Assembly: GCA_002269645.1 (NCBI GenBank)
Contig: NIVC01000377.1
Span: 18,623 to 82,622, forward strand
Direction: 5' to 3'
From: Macrostomum lignano
Taxonomy: Eukaryota
Length of the DNA: 64,000 nucleotides
The notes under the pieces were generated by a model. That model had not been told where the DNA came from and searched no databases. It was given only the letters and a program-made list of their open reading frames with translations. This document shows positions 27,648-54,389 of this stretch, piece by piece; positions within the stretch are counted from its first letter, which is position 1, and each line of letters begins with the position of its first letter. The position numbers were made by a program, and so were the translations under genes.

Positions 27648-30600
27648 TCAGTCAGACTCCAGCGGCTTAGCTGGGCAGTCCCCACAGGCGATGCCGCTGT
27701 CTTGTGACCGGCCAGCCGCTTGCCGCAGGCGCAGGTTCTCCCTGCGCAGGCCGTCGAGCTGCTCGCGCATGTCGGCTCGCTCCACCAGCAGCTGCTGGCG
27801 CCACTGCTTGGCAGCGGAGTCAGCGTCCGCCAGCCGCAGCTCGCAGACCTGCCGCACCGACCGCAGCTCCGCCTCGGCGGCCACTCGGCGGTCCCGCTCG
27901 GCGTCGCAGCGGACCCGCAGCTGGCCCAGCTGGTCAAGGAGCCGCTGGCAGCGCCGCTCAGATTGCAGCAGCTGCTCATCCGGCACCGCCGCTGCGGCCG
28001 TGGCCGATGACGTCATCAGGCTCTCGGAGCTGCGTCGTCGGCGCTCCGGCTGAGCCAGCTGGTGGGCGCTCTTCGACTTCTGCACGGCTGCGGCTTCGGC
28101 TGCCGAAGCGGCGTCTCCGTCGGCGTTTTCGTAGTAGCCAGCGTCTCGCGAGCGACCGCGGCCGCCGCCGGAGCTGCGAGAGAACATCAGCAGGCGCTTG
28201 AAGCCGCTGCCTCCGCTGCCACCGCCGCTGCCGGTTTGGTCGGCGAGGTTCGCTGACTTCCACTTCTTGGAGCGGAAGAAGCCCAGCCGTCGCGACGACT
28301 TCCTGGTGAGCGCCCCGCCGCCGGGACTGCCGCCGCCTCCGCCCCCGTCAGCCGGTTGCAGCGGCGGCGGAGTTGTCGTGGAGGAAGACGACGAAATCTC
28401 AAAGGCGCCTGCACCACCTGAGCGATGATCGCCGAATGGTTCGAGGTCAGCTGAGGACACGCCGGAGCTGAAGCTCTGATCTGCAAGCGGCGTGTGTTGT
28501 TTTTTCTAAACAATGTCGTCTGTTTGGTTTTGTGGAATGCACTGCCATTTTCATACTGGCGGCGCAGGGCCCGCAACTTACCGTACTTGGCGCTCAGGTA
28601 GCTGCGAAAGTCGATCAGGCTGCGCAATTGTTTTCCAATCTCTGCTGCCGAGATTCTGAGCTGCGGCATCTAAAATTGGAATGAGTTTCAGTGATGCAAC
28701 TACAGTTTGACAACCAATTTTGATTGATGGAGTGTGTTTAAGCTGTTGTTTTCACTGAACCATGACCTTAGCATGACCCTAGCATGACTCTAGCATGACT
28801 CTAGCATGACCCTAGCATGACTCTAGCATGACTCTAGCATGACTCTAGCATGACCCTAGCATGACTCTAGCATGACTCTAGCATGACTCTAGCATGACTT
28901 TAGCATGGCTCTAGCATGACCCTAGCATGGCTCTAGCATGACCCTAGCATGACTCTAGCATGACCCTGGCATGACCCTAGCATGACTCTAGCATGACTCT
29001 AGCATGACCCTAGCATGACTCTAGCATGACTCTAGCATGACTTTAGCATGGCTCTAGCATGACCCTAGCATGGCTCTAGCATGACCCTAGCATGACTCTA
29101 GCATGACCCTGGCATGACTCTAGCATGACTCTAGCATTCCATCTGGACTTAGACTCTCAGCGTCAAAATCTGACAAAGACTACACCTGTCTAATTATCAG
29201 TATGTGACAAAGACTACACCTGTCTAATTATCAGTATGTGACAAAGACTACACTTCTCTATGAATGAGCAGAGGCAGAGAAACGGCAGCTTACGCTGTGC
29301 AGGCAGGATCGAATCAGATGGTCCAACGCCGCTGTGAGCTCTTTAGGCAGCAGCGGGGAGCTGAGCATGAGCGGGGGCGGCTGAGCACCTGCTGAGCAGT
29401 CGCTGGGCTGGCGGCCGTGAGAGAACAAAGACCAGACCAGCAGGCCGAGCGCCCAGACATCCGACGCGCAGGTGGGCAGCTGCCTGGCGCCACTCGCGAT
29501 CTCCGGACACAGAGGCGCCACTCGGCAGTACTTGCGCCACATCAGATGAACCAGAGGTCGCGGGCTCGAATCCTCGAATCGGGCGAACTCCAAGCCGGAG
29601 ACTTTCACGGTGAATCTGTCGGATCGTTCTAGCAGGCAGTTGTCCAGGACCTGTCGAGTCAATTCGGGGGTAGACATTCGGTTTATACTACTTAACGCTA
29701 TTCGTGAGATTTAGCTTTTAACTTTTATTAAAGTGAATTACATACAAATATTCAGATCTGGTCAAACTAAATGCTTTCCTTCAATCATTGTCATATCATA
29801 TTTTATTTTGAGTTCTAATTTTGTCAAAAATGAGGTCAGAATCAGAATCAGAAACTGCTCATTGGGTCATTTCATAGACGGTCAAAGATCAGGGTCATAA
29901 ATCAAGGGTCATAGTTAAGAGGGTCAAAGTCCGAAGGGTTATGGATCAGAGGGTCATAGATTAGAGGGTCATAGATTAGAGGGTCATAGATTAGAGGGTC
30001 AAAGATTAGAGAGTCATAGGTTAGAGTGTCATAGATTAGAGTGTCATAGATTAGAGTGTCATAGATTAGAGTGTCATAGATTAGAGGGTCATAGATTAGA
30101 GGATTATAAATTAGAGGATTATAAATTAGAGGGTCATAGATTAGAGGGTCAAAGATAGAGGGTCATAGATTAGAGGTTTATAAATTAGAGGGTCATAGAC
30201 TAGAGGGTCAAAGATAGAGGGTCATAGATCAGAGGGTCGTAGATCAGAGGGTCGTAGATTAGAGGGTCATAGATCAGAGGGTCAAAGATTAGAGGGTCAT
30301 AGATTAGAGGGGCATAGATTAGAGGGCCATAGATTAGAGGATTATAAATTAGAGGGTCATAGATCAGAGGGTCATAGATCAGAGGGTCATAGATTAGAGG
30401 GGCATAGATTAGAGGGTCATAGATTAGAGGATTATAAATTAGAGGGTCATAGATCAGAGGGTCATAGATCAGAGGGTCATAGATTAGAGGGGCATAGATT
30501 AGAGGGTCATAGATCAGAGGGTCAAAGATTAGAGGGTCATAGATTAGAGGGGCATAGATTAGAGGGCCATAGATTAGAGGATTATAAATTAGAGGGTCAT

Positions 30601-33600
30601 AGATCAGAGGGTCATAGATCAGAGGGTCATAGATTAGAGGGGCATAGATTAGAGGGTCATAGATTAGAGGATTATAAATTAGAGGGTCATAGATCAGAGG
30701 GTCATAGATCAGAGGGTCATAGATTAGAGGGGCATAGATTAGGTCATAATCAGAATATTATTATTCAAAGGAAGTGGATCATAGCTTATATGAGGTCATA
30801 GCTCAGAAAGTCATAGCTCAGACGAGGGGACAACTCATTAAGGGTCACTAAGTGCAGATTAGTGCTTAGCTTGGCACTGATGGGAGCAAACAATACAATA
30901 GCTGCAATTCACCAGCTCGTTGTGCACGACGCCCTTTCTGTGCAGGTAGGCGGAGGCGTTGGCCACCTGGCCGCCGAAGCTGATTAGGATTTCCCAGTCT
31001 CTCAGCAGCCGTTCGCCCTGCTTGTGCAGGAATTGACGCAAACTGCCGCAGTTGATGTGCTCGGTGATGAGGCAGTAGCCGGACATTGGGTGGCCGGGCG
31101 TGTGGTGCAGGCCCAGCAGCTTGATGAGGTTGGCGTGGTCCAGCAGCCTTTGGTGGGTGTTAGAAATGTTCCATTTTTGACAGGGTTTTACAAATCAATT
31201 TTGAAGTATGGCTCACTCTGGGTGCACCGCTACTAATAGAAAAGTTGTTGCATGATTGAGTCTGTTCTGTAAGCATGTAGGCTGTTCTGTAAGCATGTAG
31301 GCTGTTCTGTAAGCATGTAGGCTGTTCTGTAAGCATGTAGGCTGTTCTGTAAGCATGTAGGCTGTTCTGTAAGCATGTAGGCTGTTCTGTAAGCATGTAG
31401 GCTGTTCTGTAAGCATGTAGGCTGTTCTGTAAGCATGTAGGCTGTTCTGTAAGCATGTAGGCTGTTCTGTAAGCATGTAGGCTGTTCTGTAAGCATGTAG
31501 GCTGTTCTGTAAGCATGTAGGCTGTTCTGTAAGCATGTAGGCTGTTCTGTAAGCATGTAGGCTGTTCTGTAAGCATGTAGGCTGTTCTGTAAGCATGTAG
31601 GCTGTTCTGTAAGCATGTAGGCTGTTCTGTAAGCATGTAGGCTGTTCTGTAAGCATGTAGGCTGTTCTGTAAGCATGTAGGCTGTTCTGTAAGCATGTAG
31701 GCTGTTCTGTAAGCATGTAGGCTGTTCTGTAAGCATGTAGGCTGTTCTGTAAGCATGTAGGCTGTTCTGTAAGCATGTAGGCTGTTCTGTAAGCATGTAG
31801 GCTGTTCTGTAAGCATGTAGGCTGTTCTGTAAGCATGTAGGCTGTTCTGTAAGCATGTAGGCTGTTCTGTAGGCATGTAGGCTGTTCTGTAAGCATGTAG
31901 GCTGTTCTGTAAGCATGTAGGCTGTTCTGTAAGCATGTAGGCTGTTCTGTAAGCATGTAGGCTGTTCTGTAAGCATGTAGGCTGTTCTGTAAGCATGTAG
32001 GCTGTTCTGTAAGCATGTAGGCTGTTCTGTAAGCATGTAGGCTGTTCTGTAAGCATGTAGGCTGTTCTGTAAGCATGTAGGCTGTTCTGTAAGCATGTAG
32101 GCTGTTCTGTAAGCATGTAGGCTGTTCTGTAAGCATGTAGGCTGTTCTGTAAGCATGTAGGCTGTTCTGTAAGCATGTAGGCTGTTCTGTAAGCATGTAG
32201 GCTGTTCTGTAAGCATGTAGGCTGTTCTGTAAGCATGTAGGCTGTTCTGTAAGCATGTAGGCTGTTCTGTAAGCATGTAGGCTGTTCTGTAAGCATGTAG
32301 GCTGTTCTGTAAGCATGTAGGCTGTTCTGTAAGCATGTAGGCTGTTCTGTAAGCATGTAGGCTGTTCTGTAAGCATGTAGGCTGTTCTGTAAGCATGTAG
32401 GCTGTTCTGTAAGCATGTAGGCTGTTCTGTAAGCATGTAGGCTGTTCTGTAAGCATGTAGGCTGTTCTGTAAGCATGTAGGCTGTTCTGTAGCATGTAGG
32501 CTGTTCTGTAAGCATCTAAGCTGTTCTGTAAGCATGTAGGCTGTTCTGTAAGCATGTAGGCTGTTCTGTAAGCATGTAGGCTGTTCTGTAAGCATGTAGG
32601 CTGTTCTGTAAGCATGTAGGCTGTTCTGTAAGCATGTAGGCTGTTCTGTAAGCATGTAGGCTGTTCTGTAAGCATGTAGGCTGTTCTGTAAGCATGTAGG
32701 CTGTTCTGTAAGCATGTAGGCTGTTCTGTAAGCATGTAGGCTGTTCTGTAAGCATGTAGGCTGTTCTGTAAGCATGTAGGCTGTTCTGTAAGCATGTAGG
32801 CTGTTCTGTAAGCATGTAGGCTGTTCTGTAAGCATGTAGGCTGTTCTGTAAGCATGTAGGCTGTTCTGTAAGCATGTAGGCTGTTCTGTAAGCATGTAGG
32901 CTGTTCTGTAAGCATGTAGGCTGTTCTGTAAGCATGTAGGCTGTTCTGTAAGCATGTAGGCTGTTCTGTAAGCATGTAGGCTGTTCTGTAAGCATGTAGG
33001 CTGTTCTGTAAGCATGTAGGCTGTTCTGTAAGCATGTAGGCTGTTCTGTAAGCATGTAGGCTGTTCTGTAAGCATGTAGGCTGTTCTGTAAGCATGTAGG
33101 CTGTTCTGTAAGCATGTAGGCTGTTCTGTAAGCATGTAGGCTGTTCTGTAAGCATGTAGGCTGTTCTGTAAGCATGTAGGCTGTTCTGTAAGCATGTAGG
33201 CTGTTCTGTAAGCATGTAGGCTGTTCTGTAAGCATGTAGGCTGTTCTGTAAGCATGTAGGCTGTTCTGTAAGCATGTAGGCTGTTCTGTAAGCATGTAGG
33301 CTGTTCTGTAAGCATGTAGGCTGTTCTGTAAGCATGTAGGCTGTTCTGTAAGCATGTAGGCTGTTCTGTAAGCATGTAGGCTGTTCTGTAAGCATGTAGG
33401 CTGTTCTGTAAGCATGTAGGCTGTTCTGTAAGCATGTAGGCTGTTCTGTAAGCATGTAGGCTGTTCTGTAAGCATGTAGGCTGTTCTGTAAGCATGTAGG
33501 CTGTTCTGTAAGCATGTAGGCTGTTCTGTAAGCATGTAGGCTGTTCTGTAAGCATGTAGGCTGTTCTGTAAGCATGTAGGCTGTTCTGTAAGCATGTAGG

Positions 33601-36600
33601 CTGTTCTGTAAGCATGTAGGCTGTTCTGTAAGCATGTAGGCTGTTCTGTAAGCATGTAGGCTGTTCTGTAAGCATGTAGGCTGTTCTGTAAGCATGTAGG
33701 CTGTTCTGTAAGCATGTAGGCTGTTCTGTAAGCATGTAGGCTGTTCTGTAAGCATGTAGGCTGTTCTGTAAGCATGTAGGCTGTTCTGTAAGCATGTAGG
33801 CTGTTCTGTAAGCATGTAGGCTGTTCTGTAAGCATGTAGGCTGTTCTGTAAGCATGTAGGCTGTTCTGTAAGCATGTAGGCTGTTCTGTAAGCATGTAGG
33901 CTGTTCTGTAAGCATGTAGGCTGTTCTGTAAGCATGTAGGCTGTTCTGTAAGCATGTAGGCTGTTCTGTAAGCATGTAGGCTGTTCTGTAAGCATGTAGG
34001 CTGTTCTGTAAGCATGTAGGCTGTTCTGTAAGCATGTAGGCTGTTCTGTAAGCATGTAGGCTGTTCTGTAAGCATGTAGGCTGTTCTGTAAGCATGTAGG
34101 CTGTTCTGTAAGCATGTAGGCTGTTCTGTAAGCATGTAGGCTGTTCTGTAAGCATGTAGGCTGTTCTGTAAGCATGTAGGCTGTTCTGTAAGCATGTAGG
34201 CTGTTCTGTAAGCATGTAGGCTGTTCTGTAAGCATGTAGGCTGTTCTGTAAGCATGTAGGCTGTTCTGTAAGCATGTAGGCTGTTCTGTAAGCATGTAGG
34301 CTGTTCTGTAAGCATGTAGGCTGTTCTGTAAGCATGTAGGCTGTTCTGTAAGCATGTAGGCTGTTCTGTAAGCATGTAGGCTGTTCTGTAAGCATGTAGG
34401 CTGTTCTGTAAGCATGTAGGCTGTTCTGTAAGCATGTAGGCTGTTCTGTAAGCATGTAGGCTGTTCTGTAAGCATGTAGGCTGTTCTGTAAGCATGTAGG
34501 CTGTTCTGTAAGCATGTAGGCTGTTCTGTAAGCATGTAGGCTGTTCTGTAAGCATGTAGGCTGTTCTGTAAGCATGTAGGCTGTTCTGTAAGCATGTAGG
34601 CTGTTCTGTAAGCATGTAGGCTGTTCTGTAAGCATGTAGGCTGTTCTGTAAGCATGTAGGCTGTTCTGTAAGCATGTAGGCTGTTCTGTAAGCATGTAGG
34701 CTGTTCTGTAAGCATGTAGGCTGTTCTGTAAGCATGTAGGCTGTTCTGTAAGCATGTAGGCTGTTCTGTAAGCATGTAGGCTGTTCTGTAAGCATGTAGG
34801 CTGTTCTGTAAGCATGTAGGCTGTTCTGTAAGCATGTAGGCTGTTCTGTAAGCATGTAGGCTGTTCTGTAAGCATGTAGGCTGTTCTGTAAGCATGTAGG
34901 CTGTTCTGTAAGCATGTAGGCTGTTCTGTAAGCATGTAGGCTGTTCTGTAAGCATGTAGGCTGTTCTGTAAGCATGTAGGCTGTTCTGTAAGCATGTAGG
35001 CTGTTCTGTAAGCATGTAGGCTGTTCTGTAAGCATGTAGGCTGTTCTGTAAGCATGTAGGCTGTTCTGTAAGCATGTAGGCTGTTCTGTAAGCATGTAGG
35101 CTGTTCTGTAAGCATGTAGGCTGTTCTGTAAGCATGTAGGCTGTTCTGTAAGCATGTAGGCTGTTCTGTAAGCATGTAGGCTGTTCTGTAAGCATGTAGG
35201 CTGTTCTGTAAGCATGTAGGCTGTTCTGTAAGCATGTAGGCTGTTCTGTAAGCATGTAGGCTGTTCTGTAAGCATGTAGGCTGTTCTGTAAGCATGTAGG
35301 CTGTTCTGTAAGCATGTAGGCTGTTCTGTAAGCATGTAGGCTGTTCTGTAAGCATGTAGGCTGTTCTGTAAGCATGTAGGCTGTTCTGTAAGCATGTAGG
35401 CTGTTCTGTAAGCATGTAGGCTGTTCTGTAAGCATGTAGGCTGTTCTGTAAGCATGTAGGCTGTTCTGTAAGCATGTAGGCTGTTCTGTAAGCATGTAGG
35501 CTGTTCTGTAAGCATGTAGGCTGTTCTGTAAGCATGTAGGCTGTTCTGTAAGCATGTAGGCTGTTCTGTAAGCATGTAGGCTGTTCTGTAAGCATGTAGG
35601 CTGTTCTGTAAGCATGTAGGCTGTTCTGTAAGCATGTAGGCTGTTCTGTAAGCATGTAGGCTGTTCTGTAAGCATGTAGGCTGTTCTGTAAGCATGTAGG
35701 CTGTTCTGTAAGCATGTAGGCTGTTCTGTAAGCATGTAGGCTGTTCTGTAAGCATGTAGGCTGTTCTGTAAGCATGTAGGCTGTTCTGTAAGCATGTAGG
35801 CTGTTCTGTAAGCATGTAGGCTGTTCTGTAAGCATGTAGGCTGTTCTGTAAGCATGTAGGCTGTTCTGTAAGCATGTAGGCTGTTCTGTAAGCATGTAGG
35901 CTGTTCTGTAAGCATGTAGGCTGTTCTGTAAGCATGTAGGCTGTTCTGTAAGCATGTAGGCTGTTCTGTAAGCATGTAGGCTGTTCTGTAAGCATGTAGG
36001 CTGTTCTGTAAGCATGTAGGCTGTTCTGTAAGCATGTAGGCTGTTCTGTAAGCATGTAGGCTGTTCTGTAAGCATGTAGGCTGTTCTGTAAGCATGTAGG
36101 CTGTTCTGTAAGCATGTAGGCTGTTCTGTAAGCATGTAGGCTGTTCTGTAAGCATGTAGGCTGTTCTGTAAGCATGTAGGCTGTTCTGTAAGCATGTAGG
36201 CTGTTCTGTAAGCATGTAGGCTGTTCTGTAAGCATGTAGGCTGTTCTGTAAGCATGTAGGCTGTTCTGTAAGCATGTAGGCTGTTCTGTAAGCATGTAGG
36301 CTGTTCTGTAAGCATGTAGGCTGTTCTGTAAGCATGTAGGCTGTTCTGTAAGCATGTAGGCTGTTCTGTAAGCATGTAGGCTGTTCTGTAAGCATGTAGG
36401 CTGTTCTGTAAGCATGTAGGCTGTTCTGTAAGCATGTAGGCTGTTCTGTAAGCATGTAGGCTGTTCTGTAAGCATGTAGGCTGTTCTGTAAGCATGTAGG
36501 CTGTTCTGTAAGCATGTAGGCTGTTCTGTAAGCATGTAGGCTGTTCTGTAAGCATGTAGGCTGTTCTGTAAGCATGTAGGCTGTTCTGTAAGCATGTAGG

Positions 36601-39600
36601 CTGTTCTGTAAGCATGTAGGCTGTTCTGTAAGCATGTAGGCTGTTCTGTAAGCATGTAGGCTGTTCTGTAAGCATGTAGGCTGTTCTGTAAGCATGTAGG
36701 CTGTTCTGTAAGCATGTAGCTGTTAGGCTGTTCTGTAAGCATGTAGGCTGTTCTGTAAGCATGTAGGCTGTTCTGTAAGCATGTAGGCTGTTCTGTAAGC
36801 ATGTAGGCTGTTCTGTAAGCTTTTAGGCTGCTCTATAAGCTCTTAGGCTGTGCTTTTAGGCTGTTCAATAAACTTGCATACTGTTATTCAATACACTACT
36901 GCATTAGTTTTCTTTGTTAACCGCGCGTAAAAAGCTGTAGGCCCGAAGCCAGGAGTGAAAGCGAGAGGTTCCCACAATTAACAATTGACAAGTGCTGGAC
37001 AAGCTGCAGTCCAAGCAAAAAGCTGTTGCCGAAGTTAATTTAGCAAATCGACCCCCAAAAAGAAAATGAATTGCATAAAATTTCACAAAGAAAACTCTTG
37101 TACAGTGTCCGGAACTGTAATATCCTGAAGTTGCACTTCATCTCAGCTTTTTTTCTCTCAGCCTGACCATCGGAGGACGCGACAAGTGGGTACTCTGCAT
37201 TTGGAAGAAGCGTGTTGCGAGAACCAATGGTTATTAAGTTAATTGCTTGAGCGCTCAGCAAGGCGCGCTACAACCCCCCCATTGTGCGACGCCTTGCAAT
37301 TAACAGGCCGCTGCCGTGTTGTCGGCTGATTGACAGGGCGAAAATTGGCGAACTACCTACCACCTTTGCTCAGTGCCACCCCCGGGCCTCAACCTCAGTG
37401 CTTGACGCACCATTTCTATTGTAGGCGGAAACCAGCGCTTTCATTTTCTATCGTCAACCACTCAGATTTGACAGGTCGCGGTGGGTGGCAGGTTAAGTGC
37501 GGAGCTGGTTGAAGGCGAGGCTCGAGTGGACTGGAGGGTGACGGTCTGTTGTTAATAGCGCGAGCCGGTGCAGAGAGGTAGACAAATGTGACAGGCACTG
37601 ACAAGAACATTGAGGGCAGACATTGAGTCAGATCTATTTATGCTTTTCAGCGATGCTTGGGCTGAGTAACCAGTTACGAGTATAGTAAAAACGCTGTTTG
37701 AGCAATTGGAAAGGTAGTGGGGAATGTCAAGGAGGTAGTGTGGTGTCTTTTAAGATATTAGGGTGCCTGTAAAGGTATTTGGGTGTCTGAGAAGACAGCA
37801 GGGTGTCTGAAAAAGATAACGGGATGTTTGAGAAGACGGCAGGATATCTGAGAAGATGGCACAGTGTCTGGGAAGACAGCAGGGTGTTTGGGAAGACAGC
37901 AGGGTGTTTGAGAAGATAGCAGGGTGTTTGAGAATACATCAGGGTGTTTGAGAAGACAGCAGGGTGTCTGAGAATACATCAGGGTGTCTGAGAATACATC
38001 AGGGTGTCTGAGAATACATCAGGGTGTCTGAGAAGGCAGTGAGATGTCTGACATAACCCCCAAAGTCAGCGTGAACTCACATGAGCATGGAGGCGGCGTT
38101 CCTCAGACAGGCGGTCACTTCGTGCGAATTGTACCGCCGATTGATGGCGCTCACAGCCTCGTGACCGAATCTGCCGTGCTCGAGAGTCTGCGAGTGCGGT
38201 CAGGACAGAAAAAGTTAACTTTTTAAAGGCCGTTTATGACAGTGGCGCTGTGATAGTGTCTGACAGGCGGGACAGAGAAACAGATCGGTAGGGCATGCAG
38301 AGGGCATGGAAGCCATTGAGCTATCAGCTTGACACTCAGCTGCTGGCACTGAAGTGGGTCTCACTCTCTTCTCCTATGCTTGAGCACTGGCTGCCCAAGC
38401 CTGCTGCTACAGAGAGACACTGAGTTGAAGAGGTCGTGTAGGTGAGAGCGGGGGGGGCATCCACTTACAACACTTCCGAATGAGTTTGAGCAGACAGAAA
38501 TGAGACAAGCATGTCAGAAAAGAACTTGATTCCACGATCTTATAGCAGAAGAGTTATTTTATAAAGAAAGAAGAAACATGATTCCTTTACATATCCGGTT
38601 TCTGCGAGTGATTCCAAGTCTCCCCAGGAAGAGTCCAGTATCGAGTGACTTGATGAATAAACAAATTATTGTACAGCTTGGCTCCATTTGTTAGCTCCGA
38701 TTAAACCTGGCTTTTGTGCAGCTTGCCAAGCATCGTAAATACTATTGTGGCCAATCCTGTGCACACATTGGGCAGTCTGCCCCGACTGCTATGACTTACC
38801 TGCGCGGCCATACTTTAACTGGATGGTACGGGCTCATTTTGTGTGAGTGTTCAGGTCGTATCGGCTGACACCATTATCTCACTGTTCTATAAGATTTTGT
38901 TTAGCGCCACTTTTGACTGGTTTTACAGTACCGGCGCTTGCCCTGACAGTTAACTTGGCGCCTCCTGACTGGGTAAGAGTTTAGCGCCTCCCTGACACTC
39001 GGCATGGCGCCTCAGACTGGACAAGAGTTTAGCGCTCCCTGACACTCGGCATGGCGCCTCAGACTGGACAAGAGTTTAGCGCTCCCTGACACTCGGCATG
39101 GCGCCTCAGACTGGACAAGAGTTTAGCGCTCCCTGACACTCGGCATGGCGCCTCAGACTGGACAAGAGTTTAGCGCTCCCTGACACTCGGCATGGCGCCT
39201 CAGACTGGACAAGAGTTTAGCGCTCCCTGACACTCCATGGCGCCTGACTGGACAAGAGTTTAGCGCTCCCTGACACTCCATGGCGCCTCAGACTGGACAA
39301 GAGTTTAGCGCTCCCTGACACCCAGTGGACAAGAGTTTAGCGCTCCCTGACACCCAGTGGACAAGAGTTTAGCGCTCCCTGACACCCAGTGGACAAGAGT
39401 TTAGCGCTCCCTGACACCCAGTGGACAAGAGTTTAGCGCTCCCTGACACCCAGTGGACAAGAGTTTAGCGCTCCCTGACACCTAGTGGACAAGAGTTTAG
39501 CGCTCCCTGACACCCCCTCCCCTGACACTCGGCTTGGCGCCTCAGGTAGATAAGAGAGACGGGGAGGCAAGAGGGGCGAAGAGTTTTGTCGCCAGCCGCG

Positions 39601-42600
39601 TCGCCTTGCAGTCACTTTCCCTTTCTCCCTGTAGCCCCCAGCCAACACCTCACTCCACTCAACCTGCTACACCTTCCCACCTTGCAGCCTCAGTGGGCCC
39701 GCATACAACAGAGAATGTGTCGAGAAGAGAATAGGGGATCTTTGAATGTTTCATGAGGCGCGAAGGCCACCCACCCCTTCCTCCAGTCTCCCCAACCCCC
39801 GGCACGGGCGCGGCTGATTGTTATTGTTCTGAATTTGAAACCCGGAACTGTAAGTTTCTCTACTTCCCACCTTGAACGGGGCGCTTCCAAAGAAGCCGAA
39901 AGTGTCTATCAAACTCAGCAAACAGCTCCCACAATGCCTCCCCCGACGGCTGCTCAAGCCCTGAGTTTTTAACGACGACAATCTTGCAATTTCCCTTTAG
40001 TTTCAGAGAGCGTTAAAAAAATCCTTCACGAACCCCCCCCCCCGCCCCTGACGTGGCTGTGGCAGCTCCACGCCCAGGCCTCGGGCCGTTCAGTGGAGCA
40101 GGCATCTCAAACCTCAGCCGCTCCCTTCCCTCTGCCTGACCCTCTCCCCTCAGTCCAGCAGCTTCAATCGATTGCGCTTGGCAGATTCGCGTACACGCGA
40201 CTCAAAACTTGAACAAAAATTTGTTGAGTTCAGAGAGTACTTGAGCAACAGAATATCTTTTGGCATAGACATGCAGGCATCGATATAACATGTCCAACCA
40301 GAGTGGTTCGGTGGGGAGGACCGCGCAACAACTCGAAATGAGTTGATGGACTCAACTCACTGGAAGTGTTTAGAAATCAATGCTCAAGAGAAAGAAGAGA
40401 TAGGGAGAGAGAGAGTGACTGAGAGCATAATTGTGAAAGCTGGCCTCTGTCCATTAACAACTGCCATTCTATCATTTTGTTTAGATTAGTAGGTAAAAAA
40501 TTACATCGGAGCGTGGTAGGCTACCCGATAAGCGCAGGATCCACTAATGCCTAGGATACTATAAGCTACTCGATAAGCGCAGGATCCGCTAATGACTAGG
40601 ATACTATAAGCTACTCGATAAGCGCAGGATCCACCACTGTCTAGGATACTATACGACGTAAGCTTCCCGATAAGCGCAGGATCCACCACTGTCTAGGATA
40701 CTATACGACGTAAGCTTCCCGATAAGCGCAGGATCCACCACTGTCTAGGATACTATAAGCTACCCGATAAGCGCAGGATCCACTAATGCCTAGGATACTA
40801 TAAGCTACCCGATAAGCGCAGGATCCGCTAATGCCTAGGATACTATAAGCTACCCGATAAGCACAGGATCCACTAATGCCTAGGATACTATAAGCTACCC
40901 GATAAGCGCAGGATCCGCTAATGCCTAGGATACTATAAGCTACCCGATAAGCACAGGATCCACTAATGCCTAGGATACTATAAGCTACCCGATAAGCGCA
41001 GGATCCGCTAATGTCTAGGATACTATAAGCTTCCCGATAAGCGCAGGATCCACCACTGTCTAGGATACTATAAGCTTCCCGATAAGCGCAGGATTCGCTA
41101 ATGCCTAGGATACTATAAGCTTCCCGATAAGCGCAGGATCCGCTAATGTCTAGGATACTATAAGCTTCCCGATAAGCGCAGGATCCGCTAATGTCTAGGA
41201 TACCATAAGCTTCCCGATAAGCGCAGGATCCGCTAATTTCTAGGATACCATAAGCTTCCCGATAAGCGCAGGATCGGGGGTGACTAAGATTCAATGCAAT
41301 GAAAGCGCCTAACCGTCAGCGGGTTGACCAGCGAGCAGCTCCGTCCGTCAGAGCCGATCTCGATGTCGGCGGGCGGCAGACGCAGAAAATTCTCCACGTC
41401 CTCCGCCAGCGGGTAGCGCTGCAGACGCAGCCCGGCCAGGCCGCTGCACGGCGTGCTGCCGTAGTGCTGCACGAGCTCCTGCACGGAGTCGAATCGCTCC
41501 TGTGGCAGCAGGTAGCAACCGATTCCCGATGGGTCGGAGGTGATCCAGCAGTGTTTGACGGTTTGCTGCCAGCTGTGCGAGTTTAGGAACGGGTTGTACT
41601 GGTCCTATATAAGGCCCTTGACATAGCAGCATGCAAGATTGTCGATATACCGGTATAAATATATATTACAAGTTAAATATATATTTGAAGGATCGCTGTG
41701 GGCACCATGGCGCAACGCCTTTGTCCATTATATATATATATGGCGACGCAGAGAGTAGTACAGACAAAAAGAGATCTAGCTAGACTTTGCGCGGACGCGT
41801 TCGCAGAACAACCAAGAGGGGCAAGTCATGGCGGACTGGGGCTGAGCCCGATGGCCTGCAAGTCAGTCAGAAACGTATTATTTAGCGTCACAGTTCGGCC
41901 TTGGCCACGGCGCAGGCGCTCAGTGGGCTGATGCAGGAGAGCCAGCGCCAGAGGATTTTGCTCGCCGCGGCCGTGGCTTCTTAGACAGTGGGCCAAGTAA
42001 CATCTGACGGCGTTTACGGATAGTGCAGCTGAGCGCGGGAACACCAGCGCGAGTCATCAGGTCCCTGGTCGGCACAGTATCAGGGTAGTGCACGCCCAGG
42101 GCATAGCGGAGCAGCGACCTGTAGTGGGCATCCAGGGCTTGCTGTCGCGTTGCAGTCATTGGCACAGCCTCCATGCCATATAGGAGAATCGGCTCAACGG
42201 CAGTGCGGAAAAGGCGCATCTTTAGGTCGTCGCTAGCGGTTGAATTGAAGACGCTCCTGAGAATGCGTGCCGCACGCCAGGCCTGAGTCCTCCTGTCAGA
42301 GACAATGGTGTCGGGGCTCAAGACAAGGGAGCCGAGGTAGCGGAAGTCCTCGCACACCTTGACGACTTCTCCATTTGGAAGAGCTAGCGCAGGGGTAGTT
42401 GCAGTGCCCACGTGGACACCTCAGTCTTGGATGCGTTGATCACCAAGCCAACTCGGGTTGATCGCGAAGCGTTGATCACCAAAGCCACTGACTCCTGAGC
42501 GCATGCAAGCTAGCCAATATTGTACGGCCCTGACTGACTTTATCGTCAGGCATGTACACTCTGTGCCTTGGGGGTTGGCCCTCATTTGTGTGAATTGCAC

Positions 42601-43594
42601 CACAACCCCACGGCACCCACAGCACCGAGCACGAGATCAAACTAGGGGGTCGTGGCGCGTGAGTCAGACCTTCTAGACCTTCAACAGGATGAATAATTCG
42701 AATTACCTGAAAATCAGTGCTTAAAATGTAATCGATATTTGTCGTAAAATAATTATCATTAACTGATTCGCGGGATAAATATCAAATCTGCGCTACTCCT
42801 GTAAAAGTTAATTGGACAAGGATAAATATCGATCGGCTGTTTTAGTCGATACTTAATTAGTGGCGCTAGCACAGTAATGGAATGGGGGGAGGTAACCGGT
42901 TTGCAATATCCGTCCTAGCAACCAAGGCCGAGGGTATCGGATATGCCTTGCCCTGAACCACAGTTGGTGGCAAGCCCCGCAGCTCGATCTTGTTAAGATA
43001 AGCGTGGGGGTAAGTCGCACTAAGCCAGCTGACTGACTGGCTCTGGACCTGCTGCAAATCCAATCAATTCTTATCAACCCGACCAAAAAGTGCAGCAAAA
43101 CTCACACATAGGACAAAGCCAGGCGCTTCTTGAAGCAGCGCACGAGAAATGCGCCCTCATTGTTTGGCATCTTCTTCAGCAGCTCCGTCGCCAGCAGCGG
43201 AGACATTTCCTGGAAGAACCAGCTCTCATCCCGGACGTCCATGAGTTCGTGTCTTCTTCTTTCTGCGAGTATTTTTTTGATGTTGGCCGATCGCTTCAGT
43301 CCGGAGCTGGCTCTGTCAGAGAAATGGAAAATGAAAGCGAAAGGAATTATTGCATGCTAGCAAGGGAAGAATAATGACTTGGTCAATACTGGCGTGGCCG
43401 CTGGAGTCTTGCAACCGCGTGCAGGAAGTGAAAATGCGGGTTGGAGCCCCAAGCTGAAGGCAGAGCAGAGAGTTCAATGAAATTCTGTTAGAAATTTGAT
43501 CTCTCTTCCCCTCTTCTCACAGACTGACACTTCCTCCGTTGCGGGTTTCCGTCTGCAGCCGGCCCTGCGCCTCAAGCAGCCTTGACTTATTAGT
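27648..43594 (-). CDS. SH2-domain tyrosine-kinase-fold protein (predicted pseudokinase) with C-terminal coiled coil; >=719 aa; start exon not located
   Basis: Exons 43594-43521 (least certain), 43312-43106, 41572-41314, 38187-38081, 31147-30913, 29650-29294, 28669-28582, 28480-27648 total 2160 nt in one frame with canonical splice sites. SH2: SWFFQEM..GAFLVRC..LSYV|WQQTVKHCWI..FDSVQELVQHY. Kinase fold: LDHANLIKLLG, LITEHINCGSLRQFL, QVANASAYLH, SDVWALGLLVWSLFSHGRQP. Confidence 0.88.
28760..29137. repeat. 11-bp minisatellite (catgactctag)n
   Basis: Direct reading. Confidence 0.92.
29945..30745. repeat. 15-bp minisatellite (agattagagggtcat)n with higher-order duplication
   Basis: Period 15; the blocks starting at 30301, 30361 and 30421 are repeated at 30541, 30601 and 30661. 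Confidence 0.92.
31262..36835. repeat. Homogeneous 20-bp satellite (gctgttctgtaagcatgtag)n, ~278 copies, intronic
   Basis: Direct reading; few variants (~31871, ~32490, ~32516, ~36720); decays into flanking sequence at 36820-36870. Confidence 0.97.
37755..38040. repeat. ~20-bp degenerate minisatellite (cagggtgtctgagaagacag)
   Basis: Direct reading. Confidence 0.85.
38965..39530. repeat. Minisatellite switching from a 47-bp to a 32-bp unit
   Basis: gacaagagtttagcgctccctgacactcggcatggcgcctcagactg (47) then gacaagagtttagcgctccctgacacccagtg (32). Confidence 0.9.
40515..41277. repeat. 44-47-bp minisatellite (cgataagcgcaggatcc..taggatactataagct)
   Basis: ~17 units, most containing GGATCC; source of the spurious SCAYR ORF. 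Confidence 0.92.
41700..42515 (-). mobile_element. 5'-truncated, frameshifted non-LTR retrotransposon (RTE-like) fragment in an intron of the pseudokinase gene
   Basis: C-terminal RT motifs GLVINASKTE, FRYLGS, KMRLFRTAVEPILLYGME, then (after a frameshift near 42000) GHCLR; frameshifts are also present near 42415. Boundaries approximate. Confidence 0.8.
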
Positions 43595-44394
43595 CTGCAG
43601 CAAATTGGGAGCAGAAACTCGTCCACGCCTCCCAGGTGGTGGCTTTTGGCATGGACGCCTGGAGCCAGAGAGATCTGGACTAGAAAACCTTCCTCAAGTA
43701 CGCATTGTTCTACAGTTCTCTAAACTATTGAAAACTGATTGGGCTTCACAATTGTCAACTTCTGCTCATTATGGAGATACCTGATATTAGGCCCTTAAAA
43801 ACCGGTTGGGTAAAGCCTTTCGCTCCAGTCCTCCATCTCCAGCATCCCCTGGCTTTAGGCTGCTGGCTGGCTCTACTTCTGGCGGGCATCTGTGTGAAGG
43901 CGTTAACCATGCACCCTCTAGCACATTTTTCCCGACAGAACAGTCACTGATGGTTCGAGGAGGGGGGGGGGTTAATGACCGGGAGTTATTCGCACCCAGC
44001 TTCCGGGAATTTAAACTGCTGCTGCGCATTTTTATTCAAAAAAGCCGCGCGAAACTGCGAAATTTTTTCATCCTCAACCAGCTGCTGCCCAAATGGAGGT
44101 TGTTTACAAGCCTACACGGGATTAGCGCCGGATTAGTGGCTGCGAAGCTCTAATTAAGTCATAAATATCGGCATGAACAGGAAAACTCGCATAAACAACC
44201 GCTTTTTATGACTTTTCAATCTCTGGTCTTCTCTGACTGATCAACCGCATTGACAGGGCGGGTTAAAGGACTTGCGCTGACTTCTTTTGAAAGCAGAAAT
44301 CTCTATTTTGATCACGGTTCGTTGGGGCATAATTAGGCACCTGTTTTAAATTTGGGGACTAGATTTTCAGTAACTCTGAATTTCTAATAAGCCA

Positions 44395-44785
44395 GAGGCG
44401 GATTTAGAAATATAAAATGAGGGGGCGGGTTTTAACCATATGAGCTCGTAACAATGGGGGCGCCATAATACACTAGAGGGGCGCCATAATATACACTAGA
44501 GGGGCGCCATAATATACACTAGAGGGGCGCCATAATATACACTAGAGGGGCGCCATAATATACACTAGAGGGGCGCCATAATATACACTAGAGGGGCGCC
44601 ATAATATACACTAGAGGGGCGCCATAATCTAGACTAGAGGGGCGCCATAGTATACACTGGAAGGGGCGCCATGATCTACACTAGAGGGGCGCCATAGTAT
44701 ACACTGGAAGGGGCGCCATAATCTAGACTAGAGGGGCGCCATAATCTAGACTAGAGGGGCGCCATACTGAGCAATTTGAAACCTC
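44395..44785 (+). mobile_element. Interspersed element carrying a 23-bp minisatellite (ataatatacactagaggggcgcc), copy 1
   Basis: The unique flank ggcggatttagaaatat..ttttaaccata and the array both recur inverted at 53860-54110. Confidence 0.65.
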
Positions 44786-45139
44786 TGTGCAGCAGGTAAA
44801 TATCTAGATAGCGTACGGAGATTGGCGATAAAAGGAATGATGATGAAGATTCAGGGATATCGAAGGGCTATAAGCTGATTGGCACATCCAGAACCCCAGC
44901 CGCATGGAGTGCCAGTCACAGCGGCACTGACCGCTTCAGGTGTGCAGATGCTGCTTTTCTAGCTAAGTGGTTGCGTTGGATTACAATTACAAGTTTCCTT
45001 AGAAGTAATATTTCGATTACGTCATCATTAAGAGAAATAAGTGTTTTTAATAGCATGTAATCCGCTCAGCTGAGTCATCAGTTCGGCCGCTGATCAAGGC
45101 GACTTTGTAGAGGCAAGCAGCCGTGCCCGCCCTGACTTT

Positions 45140-45420
45140 CATCGTTAGAGCGTCGGACCTACGACTTAAAGGTCGGGGGTTCGATTCCCGATTCTAATGG
45201 ATCAATTTGTGTCCTTGAGCAAGACACTTAACTCTGCATTGCTTCAGTTCACACAGCTGTAAAATGGGCGCCAGCATTAGCTGGGGTAATTGAGGGTGTG
45301 TGGCGACCCCCCCCCGTCCTTGGACTGAACAGCCGTACGCAGTCTTCAGATGCTGCGGTTGAGCTGTCGGTTGCACATCTGGCCCAATCGGGGCAGTTGT
45401 AATCAATTATTATCATTACT
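45140..45420 (+). mobile_element. CORE-SINE copy 2
   Basis: gttagagcgtcggac..ggttcgattccc head, gtgtccttgagcaagacacttaac..gctgtaaaatggg core, (ATT)-like tail. Confidence 0.8.
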
Positions 45421-49669: not shown

Positions 49670-49995
49670 ATGTCAGACCGATTGACGGGGTTGTCGGACC
49701 CATTGAGGGGGTTGTCAGATAGATTGACGGATTGTCAGACATATTGACGGGGTTATCAGACCGATTAATGGATTGTTAGACCGATTGACGGGTTGACAGA
49801 CCGATTAATGGATTGTCAGACCGATTGACGAGGTTGACAGACCGATTAATGGATTGTCAGACCGATTGACGGGGTTGACAGACCGATTATCAGGGTTGTC
49901 AGACCGATTGACGGCGTTGTCAGACAGATTGACGGGGTTGTCAGACAGATTGACGGGTTGTCAGACCGATTGACGGGTTGTCAGACCGATTGATT
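49670..49995. repeat. ~20-bp degenerate repeat (tgtcagaccgattgacggg)
   Basis: Direct reading. Confidence 0.85.
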
Positions 49996-52280: not shown

Positions 52281-53136
52281 CCCTAATGAGCCGTATTCTC
52301 AGCAGTCTTGTCATTATCAATGATTTTCAAAGCTTCGCCTCGCCAAAGTGCTCTGGCGATGGCAATTTTGATCTGTCATCCTTTATTTATATACACTACT
52401 TGTAGTATACAGATTAGTAGAAATCAGAATATTTGACGTTTTTAACTCAACGTGAACTCATAGAAAATGAATTTATTGTAAAAATTTTTTAATTTCTCAG
52501 ACATAAATTGAAAATTTTATCCCCGCAGCTTATTTATGTGGAGAGAATCGTTTTCTGTAGATAAAAAAAGTATTCTCAGGTTATTTAGTCTCTTTGCTGA
52601 TTAATTGAATTAAGATATTTAGGATTCAAGGAGTCGATAGGGTCGGCCGACCCCCACTGGGAAAATTCTGGACCCCACCTCTGTATCACCCGGAGTTTAA
52701 GAACAGTTGACCAAACTAAACTAACATTAGTTAATTATCCATACTAGCGATTAGTTAGCCCAGGGAATACGTACAGTATTCGGTGTCAGAGAGAAAGCAA
52801 AATTATCCCACTCTGGGAGCTGCCCGAATCTTCCCCACTTTTTCCGTATATACGAGCGCATTACTAATACGTAGGAGGCCAGCTAGAGGGGAAAGATGAA
52901 ATGAAAAATGGGGATTGGGGAGTTGTTCGTCCGGAAAGGGAGATGATTTCTGATGGCTGATGCAGGGAACGTTATCAGTAGCCTTGCTGTGAATCACCCC
53001 ATAGTGCTGGCCAATGGCAGAAAGTCCTGGATCTATATAGGAGGAGACATTTCCCACACCCCGGGGCCTACGAAGCGCTGCCAAAACAGCAGACAGCCCC
53101 AGTGTGCTCATAGCGCAAGTGCAGCCAAACTATTCG

Positions 53137-54389
53137 ATGTCGGACGACTCTGAGCAGCGACAGCAGCCGGCGCCTGCGGCCTTCCAGGTGCCCGTGGATG
53201 AGGAGAACATCGCCCAGACTGGCGGCCGGCGACCCAGGCATCTGGAGCAGAGGATGGAGGATCGCGAAGGCATCACAGCCGAGGTTATGACCCGGAGACA
53301 GGCGGAGGCTGAGGAGAGACGGAAGGTGAGATGAAGCGAAGCTAGATAGCTTAAAATTTATTTGAAATCGAAACAGTTGGCGAACCTGAACTGTTCGTTA
53401 CTGAATTCGTTTTCAGTAAAGAGTGGAAGATTTTATTTTAAGATTTTCCATGACTCATTTGCCATTTGCAGTCGGTCTCCGTCTGCCCCCCTCTCTCTTT
53501 CGACTCTTCCTTCATCCCTAGGGAGGATTCAACCAACCCAACCTCGTATAGCATTGGCCCCAGTAATGACTCAGGATTTACGATGCTCAAAGTTTATCTA
53601 TATGGAAATAAAGTGAATAGCAGCATCGCAGACAGGGCGGATTTAAGGGGGGGATGATGGCGCCCCTTTCCCTTTTGGGCTGGCAGCCCCAAATATGATC
53701 AATATTCTGAACTGTAATACTTTGAATAGACGGAGTGATTAAATCCAAAAACAGGAAGAAGTGCCGAAGACACAAGCATAGAAGTTGCCTGGCTAACTTC
53801 ATACTATGTGCTCAGGTCCTCATAGAAATAAAAAAGGTCTTCACCGCCCCCCCCCATTCAGTTTTCTCAGTTTAGCGCCCCTCTAGTGTATATTGTGGCA
53901 CCCCTCTAGTGTATATCATGGCGCCCCTCTAGTGTATATCATGGCGCCCCTCTAGTGTATATCATGGCGCCCCTCTAGTGTATATCATGGCGCCCCTCTA
54001 GTGTATATCACGGCGCCCCTCTAGTGTATATTGTGGCGCCCCCACTCTTATGGTTAAAATCCGCCTATCATTTTACGAGCGCATATTTCTAAATCCGCCT
54101 TTTATCGCAGATTGCAAGATATTTTCATTCCATGCTAACCGCGATGATGAATAGAATGAAAATTAACAATCACAGAATATTTTCTCTTTAACAGCTTGTC
54201 AAAGCCGTTACGATGCTACACTAATTGCAACGCAGTGAAGGGTCAGCTGAAATGAATTTTCTTTAACCACCCCTTTCGCCATAGAGAAAAGAGGCCGAGA
54301 CAATCAAGCGCGTCAGCATGCACCACGAGAAGGTGGACAAAATCTCCAAGGATGCCGAGGATCGCAAGAAGAGGGAGAGCGTCAGCTGA
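53137..54389 (+). CDS. Stathmin-domain (STMN/STMND1-like) small protein, 97 aa
   Basis: Exons 53137-53325 (donor AAG|GTGAGA) and 54285-54389 (acceptor CCATAG), phase 0. Translation MSDDSEQ..AFQVPVDE..RPRHLEQR..TAEVMTRRQAEAEERRK|RKEAETIKRVSMHHEKVDKI.. resembles the stathmin pattern AF(E/Q)..EEIQKKLEAAEERRK. Confidence 0.72.
53860..54110 (-). mobile_element. Same minisatellite-carrying element, copy 2, in the stathmin-like intron
   Basis: ggcgcccctctagtgtatatcat units followed by tatggttaaaatccgcc..atatttctaaatccgcc. Confidence 0.65.

What the first reader, a model, noticed from the sequence alone, without database searches (positions are those of the whole stretch)
27648..43594. SH2-pseudokinase-coiled-coil protein with all four catalytic motifs replaced
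Seen in sequence: the spliced frame gives an SH2 domain with the phosphotyrosine-binding FLVR Arg intact, followed by a tyrosine-kinase fold. The Gly loop is degenerate (IEIGSDGRSCSLV). The beta3 VAVK Lys is absent (EAVSAINRR). The alphaC Glu position reads LRNAASML. HRDLAARN reads HNELVLDN across the exon junction, and DFG reads GLE (VKVSGLEFAR). Structural C-lobe motifs are kept (SDVWALGLLVW). An ~280-aa tail carries basic/aromatic patches (RRLGFFRSKKWK), a YEN motif and an ~90-aa coiled coil. Established: loss of K, E, D and DFG defines catalytically dead pseudokinases, and pYxN is a Grb2-SH2 ligand. Inference: the frame is intact over 15 kb and eight exons, suggesting a selected scaffold or dominant-negative adaptor. 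I do not recall this SH2-pseudoTK-CC architecture among the familiar cytoplasmic TK families (Src, Csk, Fer, Abl, Tec, Syk).
Basis: partly seen in the sequence, partly recalled or inferred. Interest (0 to 1): 0.75.

Follow-up and report, generated by a model that had tools for sequence, protein, structure and literature searches.

The report
Flatworm SH2-domain dead-kinase gene, conserved family
This is a real flatworm (Macrostomum lignano) gene for a phosphotyrosine-docking SH2 domain fused to a tyrosine-kinase fold that has lost its catalytic residues; a second copy in the same worm and a counterpart in a ribbon worm show it is a conserved, so far undescribed small family, probably a signalling scaffold, not an enzyme.

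Summary
The core observation holds. On the minus strand of this Macrostomum lignano window, a gene with GT-AG at every junction encodes three parts:
- a canonical SH2 domain with the FLVR Arg kept;
- a tyrosine-kinase-fold domain in which the Gly loop, beta3 Lys (to Ser), alphaC Glu (to Ala), HRD (HNE) and DFG (GLE) are all replaced;
- a tail of about 165 disordered residues and one 94-residue helix.

Corrections to the finding:
- No 5' exon at 43594 is supported. The database model puts it at 53241-53072.
- One acceptor differs (41572, not 41604).
- The product is 671 aa from Met 43242, or 751 aa from Met 53241.
- The YEN motif is not conserved.
- Classic heptad periodicity is not significant.

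The gene is not a one-off. A 52%-identical M. lignano paralog and an 'uncharacterized' protein of the nemertean Lineus longissimus share the architecture, the Lys and DFG losses, and HNEL..DN (Lineus). Three intron positions have identical phase in Lineus. The three proteins form a 100%-bootstrap clade.

Profile and fold searches place the domain nearest the Src-module kinases (Tec/Abl/Src), not JAK. I found no literature on it.

It is most likely a non-catalytic, phosphotyrosine-recruited scaffold or regulator. That function is inferred, not shown.

The parts
53072..53241 (-). Upstream exon E0. It is the annotated start of the UniProt model P0002 (ATG at 53241, donor GTAGGC) and is probably 5'UTR, not coding.
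   Evidence: tblastn of P0002 residues 1-57 at 90% identity; splice sites. It differs from P0002 at 3 of 57 residues, against 0 of about 190 in exons 1-3. The paralog P0156 starts at the Met just before its SH2 domain.
43106..43312 (-). Exon E1. In-frame Met at 43242 (MDVRDESWFF). It encodes the N-terminal half of the SH2 domain, including FLVR (Arg35 at 43140-43138). The donor is GTGAGT, phase 2.
   Evidence: Pfam SH2; intron of the same column and phase in the Lineus gene.
41314..41572 (-). Exon E2. It encodes the C-terminal half of the SH2 domain, the SH2-kinase linker and the degenerate Gly loop (IEIGSDGRSCSLV).
   Evidence: Acceptor 41572 matches P0002, the paralog and Lineus. The alternative acceptor at 41604 would insert 11 residues that no relative has.
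38081..38187 (-). Exon E3. It encodes beta3 with Ser145 in place of the catalytic Lys (AVSA), and alphaC with Ala163 in place of Glu (LRNAAS).
   Evidence: The phase-2 intron after SML(M) is shared with Lineus.
37158..37194 (-). Alternative terminal exon after E3 (...ML-I-VPTCRVLRWSG-stop). It would give a 179-aa SH2-only product.
   Evidence: It matches the C-terminus of P0002. Actual use in transcripts was not verified.
30913..31147 (-). Exon E4. It encodes the hinge, alphaD-alphaE and the start of the catalytic loop, HNEL (HRD replaced).
   Evidence: The phase-0 intron HNEL^VLDN is shared with Lineus HNEL^MVDN.
29294..29650 (-). Exon E5. It encodes VLDN (catalytic-loop Asn kept), GLE in place of DFG (29596-29588), the activation segment with PE, and SDVWALG of alphaF through alphaH.
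28582..28669 (-). Exon E6. It encodes the end of the kinase fold (MPQLRISAAEIGKQLRSL).
   Evidence: Pfam match runs to the profile end.
27648..28480 (-). Exon E7. It encodes the 276-aa tail and the stop codon. The tail has a low-complexity disordered part with the basic/aromatic patch and YYEN, then the long helix.
27699..27980 (-). The 94-residue predicted helix (protein residues 562-655). It contains CELRLADAD, which is conserved in the paralog.
   Evidence: AlphaFold2 helix with pLDDT >95. A separate BLASTP match to the paralog tail: 42% identity, E=3e-9. Weak and atypical heptad signal.

Best explanation
What it is: a protein-coding gene of Macrostomum lignano. Its product is an SH2 domain, a short linker, a tyrosine-kinase-fold pseudokinase domain, a disordered tail and one long helix.

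Family: it belongs to a small conserved family with a paralog in the same species and a counterpart in a nemertean. The family most probably descends from the SH3-SH2-kinase 'Src-module' cytoplasmic tyrosine kinases (Tec/Abl/Src lineage). The M. lignano proteins have no SH3 domain.

Shown here: the gene structure, the domains, the replaced catalytic residues, the conservation, and the nearest known relatives.

Inferred: the protein does not phosphorylate anything. The SH2 domain, which keeps Arg betaB5, His betaD4 and a basic BC loop, docks it on phosphotyrosine sites. The intact but inert kinase fold and the tail helix then act as protein-binding and self-association surfaces. The protein would therefore work as a phosphotyrosine-dependent scaffold, allosteric partner or competitor of active tyrosine kinases.
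For: - Gene model: GT/AG at all junctions and no stop codon across 7 coding exons.
- Domains: SH2 E=9e-9 and TK fold E=2e-28.
- Catalytic residues replaced.
- No other kinase-like exon in the 64-kb window that could restore them.
- Organism and database fragments: P0001 and P0002 at 99-100% identity.
- Paralog P0156: 394 bits, 52% identity, with the tail helix also matching.
- Lineus P0154: 157 bits, E=7e-44 over SH2 plus kinase. Every other one of the best 150 library representatives scores 95 bits or less.
- Motifs, in the order this gene / paralog / Lineus: beta3 Lys position S/T/T; DFG position GLE/GLL/GFH; HRD position HNE/HCD/HNE. The catalytic-loop Asn and the ARFE, PE, DVWAxG and PQxR motifs are kept in all three.
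- Three of six introns lie at the same column and phase as introns of the Lineus gene.
- The clade has 100% bootstrap support.
- Family kinase profile against PDB: BMX/ITK/BTK 104-108 bits, the Src-Abl ancestor 104.5, ABL about 99, JAK1 domains 54-57 each.
- The nearest named hits to the Lineus protein are Tec (BMX-like, 131 bits) and Abl.
- Foldseek best hits of the Lineus model are full SH3-SH2-kinase structures of Abl, Src and Hck.
- The SH2 domain is canonical by sequence: PLCgamma1, Grb2 and Src-family SH2 domains are the best PDB matches.
- The tail is disordered and ends in a 94-residue helix. Lineus has a 90-residue helix at the equivalent place.
Against: - No experiment and no transcript data were available here. 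Inactivity is predicted from sequence only, and some pseudokinases with similar losses retain weak activity or bind nucleotide.
- The catalytic-loop His and Asn, plus an acidic residue at the HRD position (Glu here, Asp in the paralog), are conserved. That could hint at a residual function of the site.
- The SH2 domain lacks Arg alphaA2 and Ser betaB7, so phosphotyrosine binding is likely but not assured.
- Placement among tyrosine kinases is unresolved in the tree (19-52% bootstrap). The Tec/Abl/Src preference in scores is modest.
- Only two species carry detected members, so 'spiralian family' rests on a thin sample.
- The database splits this locus into two models (P0002, P0001).
Confidence: 0.6

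Rival explanations
1. It is an atypical but active enzyme, or a nucleotide-binding switch. The kinase fold would still bind nucleotide and catalyse transfer by a non-canonical mechanism, for example with the Glu of HNE as base and a compensating basic residue elsewhere.
For: His and Asn of the catalytic loop are invariant in all three family members. The HRD acidic position is Glu/Asp/Glu. From established knowledge, precedents exist for activity without canonical residues: WNK, JAK2 JH2, HER3, CASK.
Against: The Gly loop is unrecognisable and differs in all three proteins. The beta3 Lys is S/T/T, and the DFG Asp is Gly in all three. No Lys or Arg that could compensate is conserved in the Gly-loop region. 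Losing all of the phosphate- and metal-binding residues together is typical of pseudokinases that bind no nucleotide.
Confidence: 0.12
2. The locus makes two separate products, as the database models suggest. One is an SH2-only adaptor ending in the alternative exon at 37194-37158. The other is an N-terminally truncated pseudokinase-plus-tail protein starting at Met in exon E4. On this reading the SH2-pseudokinase fusion is not the main product.
For: P0002 ends in that alternative exon, which has a proper AG acceptor and a stop codon. P0001 starts at MSGYCL in E4.
Against: The paralog is modelled as one 798-aa SH2-to-tail protein, and Lineus has one gene with the same order. The E3 donor and E4 acceptor complete a Met codon at exactly the position and phase of a Lineus intron. 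A kinase fold lacking its N-lobe would not fold. A 5.6-kb tandem array sits in this intron and is a likely cause of split models.
Confidence: 0.1
3. It is merely the fast-evolving, degenerate ortholog of a known kinase (Tec/Btk or Abl) in these worms, not a separate family.
For: Tec-family and Abl kinases are the best-scoring named relatives in the sequence, profile and fold searches.
Against: Identity to them is only 25-30%. PH, SH3 and F-actin-binding domains are absent. The clade does not group with Tec or Abl in the tree. Two deeply diverged paralogs (52% identity) in M. lignano and a nemertean member all share the same derived losses, so the pseudokinase state is old.
Confidence: 0.1
4. 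It is a decaying duplicate (unprocessed pseudogene) whose open frame is a coincidence.
For: Loss of catalytic residues is what decay of an enzyme gene would also produce.
Against: The frame is open and every splice site intact over seven coding exons. Structural kinase motifs are kept. There is a domain-specific conservation gradient against the paralog. The same losses occur in a different phylum, with shared introns.
Confidence: 0.03

Closest known systems
Src-module cytoplasmic tyrosine kinases (Tec/Btk/Bmx/Itk, Abl, Src family)
   Same: The order SH2, short linker, tyrosine-kinase fold is the same. They give the best profile scores for the kinase domain (BMX/ITK/BTK 104-108 bits, ABL about 99). 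They are the best named hits to the Lineus member and the best Foldseek hits (Abl, Src, Hck).
   Different: There is no detectable SH3, PH/TH or F-actin-binding domain. The Gly loop, beta3 Lys, alphaC Glu, HRD Asp and DFG Asp are all replaced. Identity is only 25-30%. There is a long disordered tail with a 94-residue helix. The protein does not cluster with these kinases in the tree.
JAK family JH2 pseudokinase domain
   Same: To my knowledge it is the only well-known case of an SH2(-like) domain directly followed by a tyrosine-kinase-fold pseudokinase. The proposed regulatory, non-catalytic role is the same.
   Different: JAKs have an N-terminal FERM domain and a second, active kinase domain (JH1); neither is present here. 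JH2 keeps the beta3 Lys. The family profile scores each JAK1 domain at only 54-57 bits, against 104-108 for Tec kinases.
PEAK1 / PRAG1 (Pragmin) / PEAK3 pseudokinase scaffolds
   Same: They are tyrosine-kinase-like pseudokinases with long disordered regions that act as scaffolds in phosphotyrosine signalling and self-associate through helices next to the pseudokinase domain. This is from established knowledge and was not tested here.
   Different: They carry no SH2 domain themselves; they recruit SH2 proteins such as Csk, Grb2 and Crk. Their dimerisation helices flank the pseudokinase domain. No sequence relationship appeared in any search here.
Uncharacterised relatives: M. lignano A0A1I8I8K7 (P0156) and Lineus longissimus LOC135490620 (XP_064631961/2; P0154/P0020)
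   Same: Same architecture. Same loss of the beta3 Lys and the DFG Asp. HNEL..DN is shared with Lineus. Three intron positions are shared with Lineus. Each has a long helix in the tail.
   Different: The paralog keeps the alphaC Glu and an HCD Asp. Lineus has about 100 extra N-terminal residues and a tail of about 750 residues. The tails are barely alignable outside the helix.

Membership tests
Protein kinase fold, tyrosine-kinase group (Pfam PF07714) | Significant match to the TK/TKL profile across the C-lobe and most of the N-lobe | tested here: met
   PF07714 E=2.1e-28, residues 153-390, profile positions 32-258 of 258. PDB tyrosine kinases match at 52-66 bits.
Catalytically competent protein kinase | GxGxxG loop, beta3 Lys, alphaC Glu, HRD Asp and DFG Asp | tested here: not met
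   The Gly-loop region does not align to the profile. The other positions read Lys to Ser145, Glu to Ala163, HRD to HNE and DFG to GLE. Of the catalytic-loop residues, only His243 and Asn250 are kept.
SH2 domain (PF00017) | SH2 profile match with the phosphotyrosine-binding Arg betaB5 (FLVR) and His betaD4 | tested here: met
   PF00017 E=9.1e-9, full profile length. The best PDB matches are PLCgamma1 C-SH2, Grb2 and Src-family SH2 domains. R35 and H53 are invariant in the family. Arg alphaA2 and Ser betaB7 are absent.
Src-module kinases (Src/Abl/Tec/Csk/Frk) | SH3 domain immediately N-terminal to the SH2 domain | tested here: not met
   Pfam finds no SH3 in this protein or the paralog. A purpose-built SH3 HMM finds no SH3-like exon in window 43000-54000. 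For the Lineus N-terminus the result is inconclusive: it aligns positionally with SH3, and AlphaFold2 gives low-confidence beta strands, but there is no sequence significance.
Src-module kinases (Src/Abl/Tec/Csk/Frk) | Kinase domain most similar to this group | tested here: inconclusive
   They give the top profile, sequence and fold hits, but the margins are small and the tree is unresolved.
Tec family | N-terminal PH domain and Btk (TH) motif | tested here: not met
   Neither is found in any family member.
JAK family | FERM domain upstream and an active JH1 kinase domain downstream of the pseudokinase | tested here: not met
   There is a single kinase-fold domain and no FERM domain. The window holds no further kinase exon.
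Fes/Fer family | N-terminal F-BAR/FCH coiled-coil region before the SH2 domain | tested here: not met
   Nothing precedes the SH2 domain in the paralog. In this gene only a short, non-domain extension precedes it. The long helix is C-terminal.
PEAK/Pragmin pseudokinases | Split helical dimerisation domain flanking the pseudokinase, and no SH2 domain | not tested
   No PEAK-family protein appeared among the sequence or fold hits. No direct comparison was run.

The most novel reading that the evidence does not exclude
This gene and its relatives are the founding members of an old family, at least as old as the flatworm-nemertean ancestor. The family consists of SH2-coupled tyrosine-kinase pseudokinases that split from the Src-module kinases. 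It would be the only such pairing known outside the JAKs. The proteins would act as self-associating, phosphotyrosine-recruited scaffolds or allosteric regulators in spiralian signalling.
Probability: 0.45. Interest if true: 0.55.

Novelty: new variant of a known kind. Interest (0 to 1): 0.42.

Why it matters
Pseudokinases are recognised regulators of signalling. Apart from the JAK JH2 domain, I know of no tyrosine-kinase pseudokinase that is directly coupled to an SH2 domain.

A conserved SH2-pseudokinase family in two spiralian phyla would add a new branch to the cytoplasmic tyrosine-kinase tree. It would also be a natural example of a Src-module kinase turned into a non-catalytic reader or scaffold.

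Macrostomum lignano is a transgenic and RNAi-tractable regeneration model, so the function can be tested directly.

On the practical side, the public models for this locus are split into two fragments, and the paralog is auto-named 'Tyrosine-protein kinase'. Both should be corrected.

Tried and rejected
- **Acceptor 41604 for exon 2 (my first model).** Rejected. It inserts 11 residues absent from P0002, the paralog and Lineus, and it breaks the shared phase-2 intron.
- **A 5' exon near 43594.** No ATG-initiated exon is there. The only supported upstream exon is 53241-53072.
- **Hidden exons restoring Lys/HRD/DFG.** tblastn of active kinases and family members against the whole window finds only the modelled exons.
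- **MET receptor as closest relative.** This was the top single-sequence PDB hit. It was not upheld by the family profile, which prefers Tec/Abl/Src.
- **JAK JH2 relationship.** Low scores and the wrong architecture.
- **Top library hits with 3-10 matched stretches (P0004-P0010).** These are proteins with many tandem kinase domains. Their summed scores inflate their rank, and they are not relatives.
- **SH3 remnant in the Lineus N-terminus, and an SH3 exon in the M. lignano intron.** There is positional and low-confidence structural resemblance only. Pfam, PDB phmmer and a purpose-built HMM find nothing.
- **Classic coiled coil.** a/d-core counting and 3.5-residue periodicity are not above shuffles. 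Only the 7/3 harmonic is significant.
- **YEN as a conserved Grb2 site.** It is absent from the paralog and Lineus.
- **Technical limits.**
  - The first homology search timed out.
  - The spliced protein was not accepted by the representative search or by structure prediction. P0001 was therefore searched, and the Lineus protein (P0020) was modelled instead.
  - The word-indexed searches missed P0156 and P0020.
- **Literature searches.** Six searches and look-ups found no description of this family. Kwon et al. 2019 on pseudokinase evolution was not held.


Full report
**Gene model**

The finding lies on the minus strand. Reading the boundaries gives a chain of exons with AG acceptors and GT donors at every junction.

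| Exon | Window coordinates | Note |
|---|---|---|
| E1 | 43312-43106 | in-frame Met at 43242 |
| E2 | 41572-41314 | |
| E3 | 38187-38081 | |
| E4 | 31147-30913 | |
| E5 | 29650-29294 | |
| E6 | 28669-28582 | |
| E7 | 28480-27648 | includes the stop codon |

From Met 43242 the product is 671 aa.

**Domains and catalytic motifs**

- Pfam finds a full-length SH2 domain (residues 8-93, E=9e-9). It also finds a tyrosine-kinase-type domain (residues 153-390, E=2e-28) that starts only at profile position 32, so the Gly-loop region does not align.
- The alignment to MET kinase structures puts Ser145 on the beta3 Lys (AVKSLNR / AVSAINR), HNE on HRD and GLE on DFG.
- By spacing from the conserved HxN motif and by alignment to the paralog, the alphaC Glu position is Ala163.
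- The catalytic-loop His and Asn, the PE of APE, DVWAxG and the alphaI Arg are kept.
- The SH2 domain on its own matches the PLCgamma1, Grb2 and Src-family SH2 domains. It keeps Arg betaB5 (FLVR) and His betaD4 but lacks Arg alphaA2 and Ser betaB7.

**Organism and database models**

The protein search identifies the organism as the free-living flatworm Macrostomum lignano. The database holds two fragment models of this locus.

- P0002 covers the 5' exon, the SH2 domain and the N-lobe.
- P0001 covers the C-lobe and part of the tail. It differs from the window at 1 residue of 291.

P0002 corrected my first model in two ways.

1. The E1/E2 junction is donor 43106 and acceptor 41572, giving LALSY-V-WQQ.
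2. That exon differs from P0002 at 3 of 57 residues, while exons 1-3 are identical. The paralog begins at the Met just before its SH2 domain. So E0 is probably untranslated and Met 43242 is the likely start. If E0 is translated, the product is 751 aa.

P0002 also ends in an alternative exon (37194-37158) that would give an SH2-only product of 179 aa. The E3/E4 intron holds a 5.6-kb array of a 20-bp unit, which probably explains why the locus was modelled in two pieces.

**Relatives**

An exhaustive HMMER search of 1.84 billion cluster representatives with P0001 gave 5272 hits. Nearly all of them reflect generic kinase similarity. The top-ranked hits are multi-kinase-domain proteins whose summed scores inflate their rank. 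BLAST of the full product against the best 150 separates three true relatives from the rest.

- **M. lignano paralog** (P0156 and fragments, UniProt A0A1I8I8K7, 798 aa): 394 bits, 52% identity over 430 residues. There is a separate match in the tail helix of 42% identity, E=3e-9.
- **Lineus longissimus 'uncharacterized protein LOC135490620'** (Nemertea; P0154/P0020, 1216/1200 aa): 157 bits, E=7e-44, 29% identity over SH2 plus kinase.
- **Everything else:** 95 bits or less. These hits come from a taxonomic mixture that includes Balamuthia, nematodes, a plant and amphioxus.

**What the family shares**

| Position | This gene | Paralog | Lineus |
|---|---|---|---|
| beta3 Lys | S | T | T |
| alphaC Glu | A | E | Q |
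| HRD | HNE | HCD | HNE |
| DFG | GLE | GLL | GFH |

- The Gly loop is unrecognisable in all three, while the structural motifs are conserved. The ancestral state is therefore loss of the Lys and of the DFG Asp. The Glu-for-Asp and alphaC changes are not family-wide.
- Between the paralogs, identity is 53-58% in the SH2 and kinase folds but 32-34% in the tail.
- I solved the exon structure of the Lineus gene exactly on its genomic locus; it has 13 coding exons. Three of our six introns fall on the same alignment column with the same phase: one in the SH2 domain, one after alphaC, and one inside HNEL^xxDN.
- A neighbour-joining tree of kinase domains groups the three proteins with 100% bootstrap. 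Their position among tyrosine kinases is unresolved, at 19-52% bootstrap.

**Nearest known kinases**

- A profile of the three kinase domains against PDB sequences scores Tec-family kinases highest per domain: BMX 108, ITK 105. The reconstructed Src-Abl ancestor scores 104.5, ABL about 99 and PTK7 99. Each JAK1 domain scores only 54-57.
- The Lineus protein's best named hits are BMX-like kinases of sea stars (131 bits) and Abl (about 105 bits).
- An AlphaFold2 model of the Lineus protein has a confident SH2 domain and kinase fold, pLDDT about 80-95. Its best Foldseek matches are the SH3-SH2-kinase structures of Abl, Src and Hck, followed by Fes and BTK.
- No member has a detectable PH, SH3, F-BAR or FERM domain, or a second kinase domain.
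- The Lineus N-terminus lines up positionally with the SH3 domain of Abl and Tec and is predicted as low-confidence beta strands. No sequence method supports an SH3 domain there, and no SH3-like exon exists upstream of E1 in the window.

**Tail**

- AlphaFold2 on the last exon gives about 165 disordered residues and one uninterrupted helix. The helix spans tail residues 167-260, which are protein residues 562-655, at pLDDT >95. Lineus has a 90-residue helix at the corresponding place.
- Core-position counting and 3.5-residue periodicity are not above shuffled controls. The 7/3 harmonic is significant in both M. lignano paralogs. A coiled coil is therefore plausible but not shown.
- The basic/aromatic patch is partly conserved in the paralog only. 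The YYEN motif is conserved in neither relative.

**Interpretation**

- The identity is well supported: this is a conserved SH2-pseudokinase gene and not a decaying copy.
- The mechanism is inferred from the anatomy and from how other pseudokinases work. SH2-mediated recruitment to phosphotyrosine sites would bring in an inert kinase fold and a long helix that serve as interaction or self-association surfaces.
- I found no paper describing this family. The public names are 'uncharacterized protein', 'SH2 domain-containing protein', 'Protein kinase domain-containing protein' and, misleadingly, 'Tyrosine-protein kinase'.
- I rate it a new variant of a known kind. It is a real and tidy case of moderate interest. 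Lineage-restricted pseudokinases are common, but an SH2-coupled one outside the JAKs is unusual.

**Surroundings**

- No Pfam domain, Rfam family or tRNA was found on either strand within or next to the gene.
- The plus strand at about 500-15000 carries a polycystin-1-like gene.

Noticed in passing
window 522-14989 (+): Exons of a polycystin-1-like gene. There is a REJ domain in the 934-aa open frame 522-3323, a PLAT hint at 9679-10221, a Polycystin domain at 12867-13265 and a PKD cation-channel domain (E=8e-42) at 14168-14989.
   Followed up: partly
window 31262-36851; also 28761-29137, 29891-30742, 38956-39515, 40520-41275, 51325-52279: The introns of the gene are packed with near-perfect minisatellites. 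The largest is a 20-bp unit repeated 279 times (5.6 kb, 99% matches) in the E3/E4 intron. It reads as fake ORFs of 1400-1850 aa in all three minus-strand frames. It is a likely cause of the split database gene models.
   Followed up: partly
window 37158-37194 (-): An alternative terminal exon after E3, with an AG acceptor, encodes I-VPTCRVLRWSG-stop. It would give a 179-aa SH2-only isoform and matches the C-terminus of UniProt model P0002.
   Followed up: partly
window 41923-42420 (-): A 166-aa open frame inside the E1/E2 intron looks by eye like the C-terminal part of a non-LTR retrotransposon ORF2. Pfam finds no family.
   Followed up: partly
L001 3001-4905 (GCA_029980185.1), L002, L003: P0003 is an intronless 634-aa protein with CARD, SH2 and an active tyrosine-kinase domain. 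It lies on small contigs of two assemblies and one metagenome. It is a weak sister (52% bootstrap) of the pseudokinase clade. The architecture is unusual and the organism was not identified.
   Followed up: partly
L004 16744-17699 (+): In Lineus longissimus the gene next to the SH2-pseudokinase homolog encodes a caveolin-domain protein. No caveolin gene was seen next to the M. lignano gene, so no synteny is evident.
   Followed up: no
window 53242-53243 (-): The ATG of the annotated upstream exon E0 is immediately preceded by CAG. This could be a splice or trans-splice acceptor and not a true transcription start.
   Followed up: no
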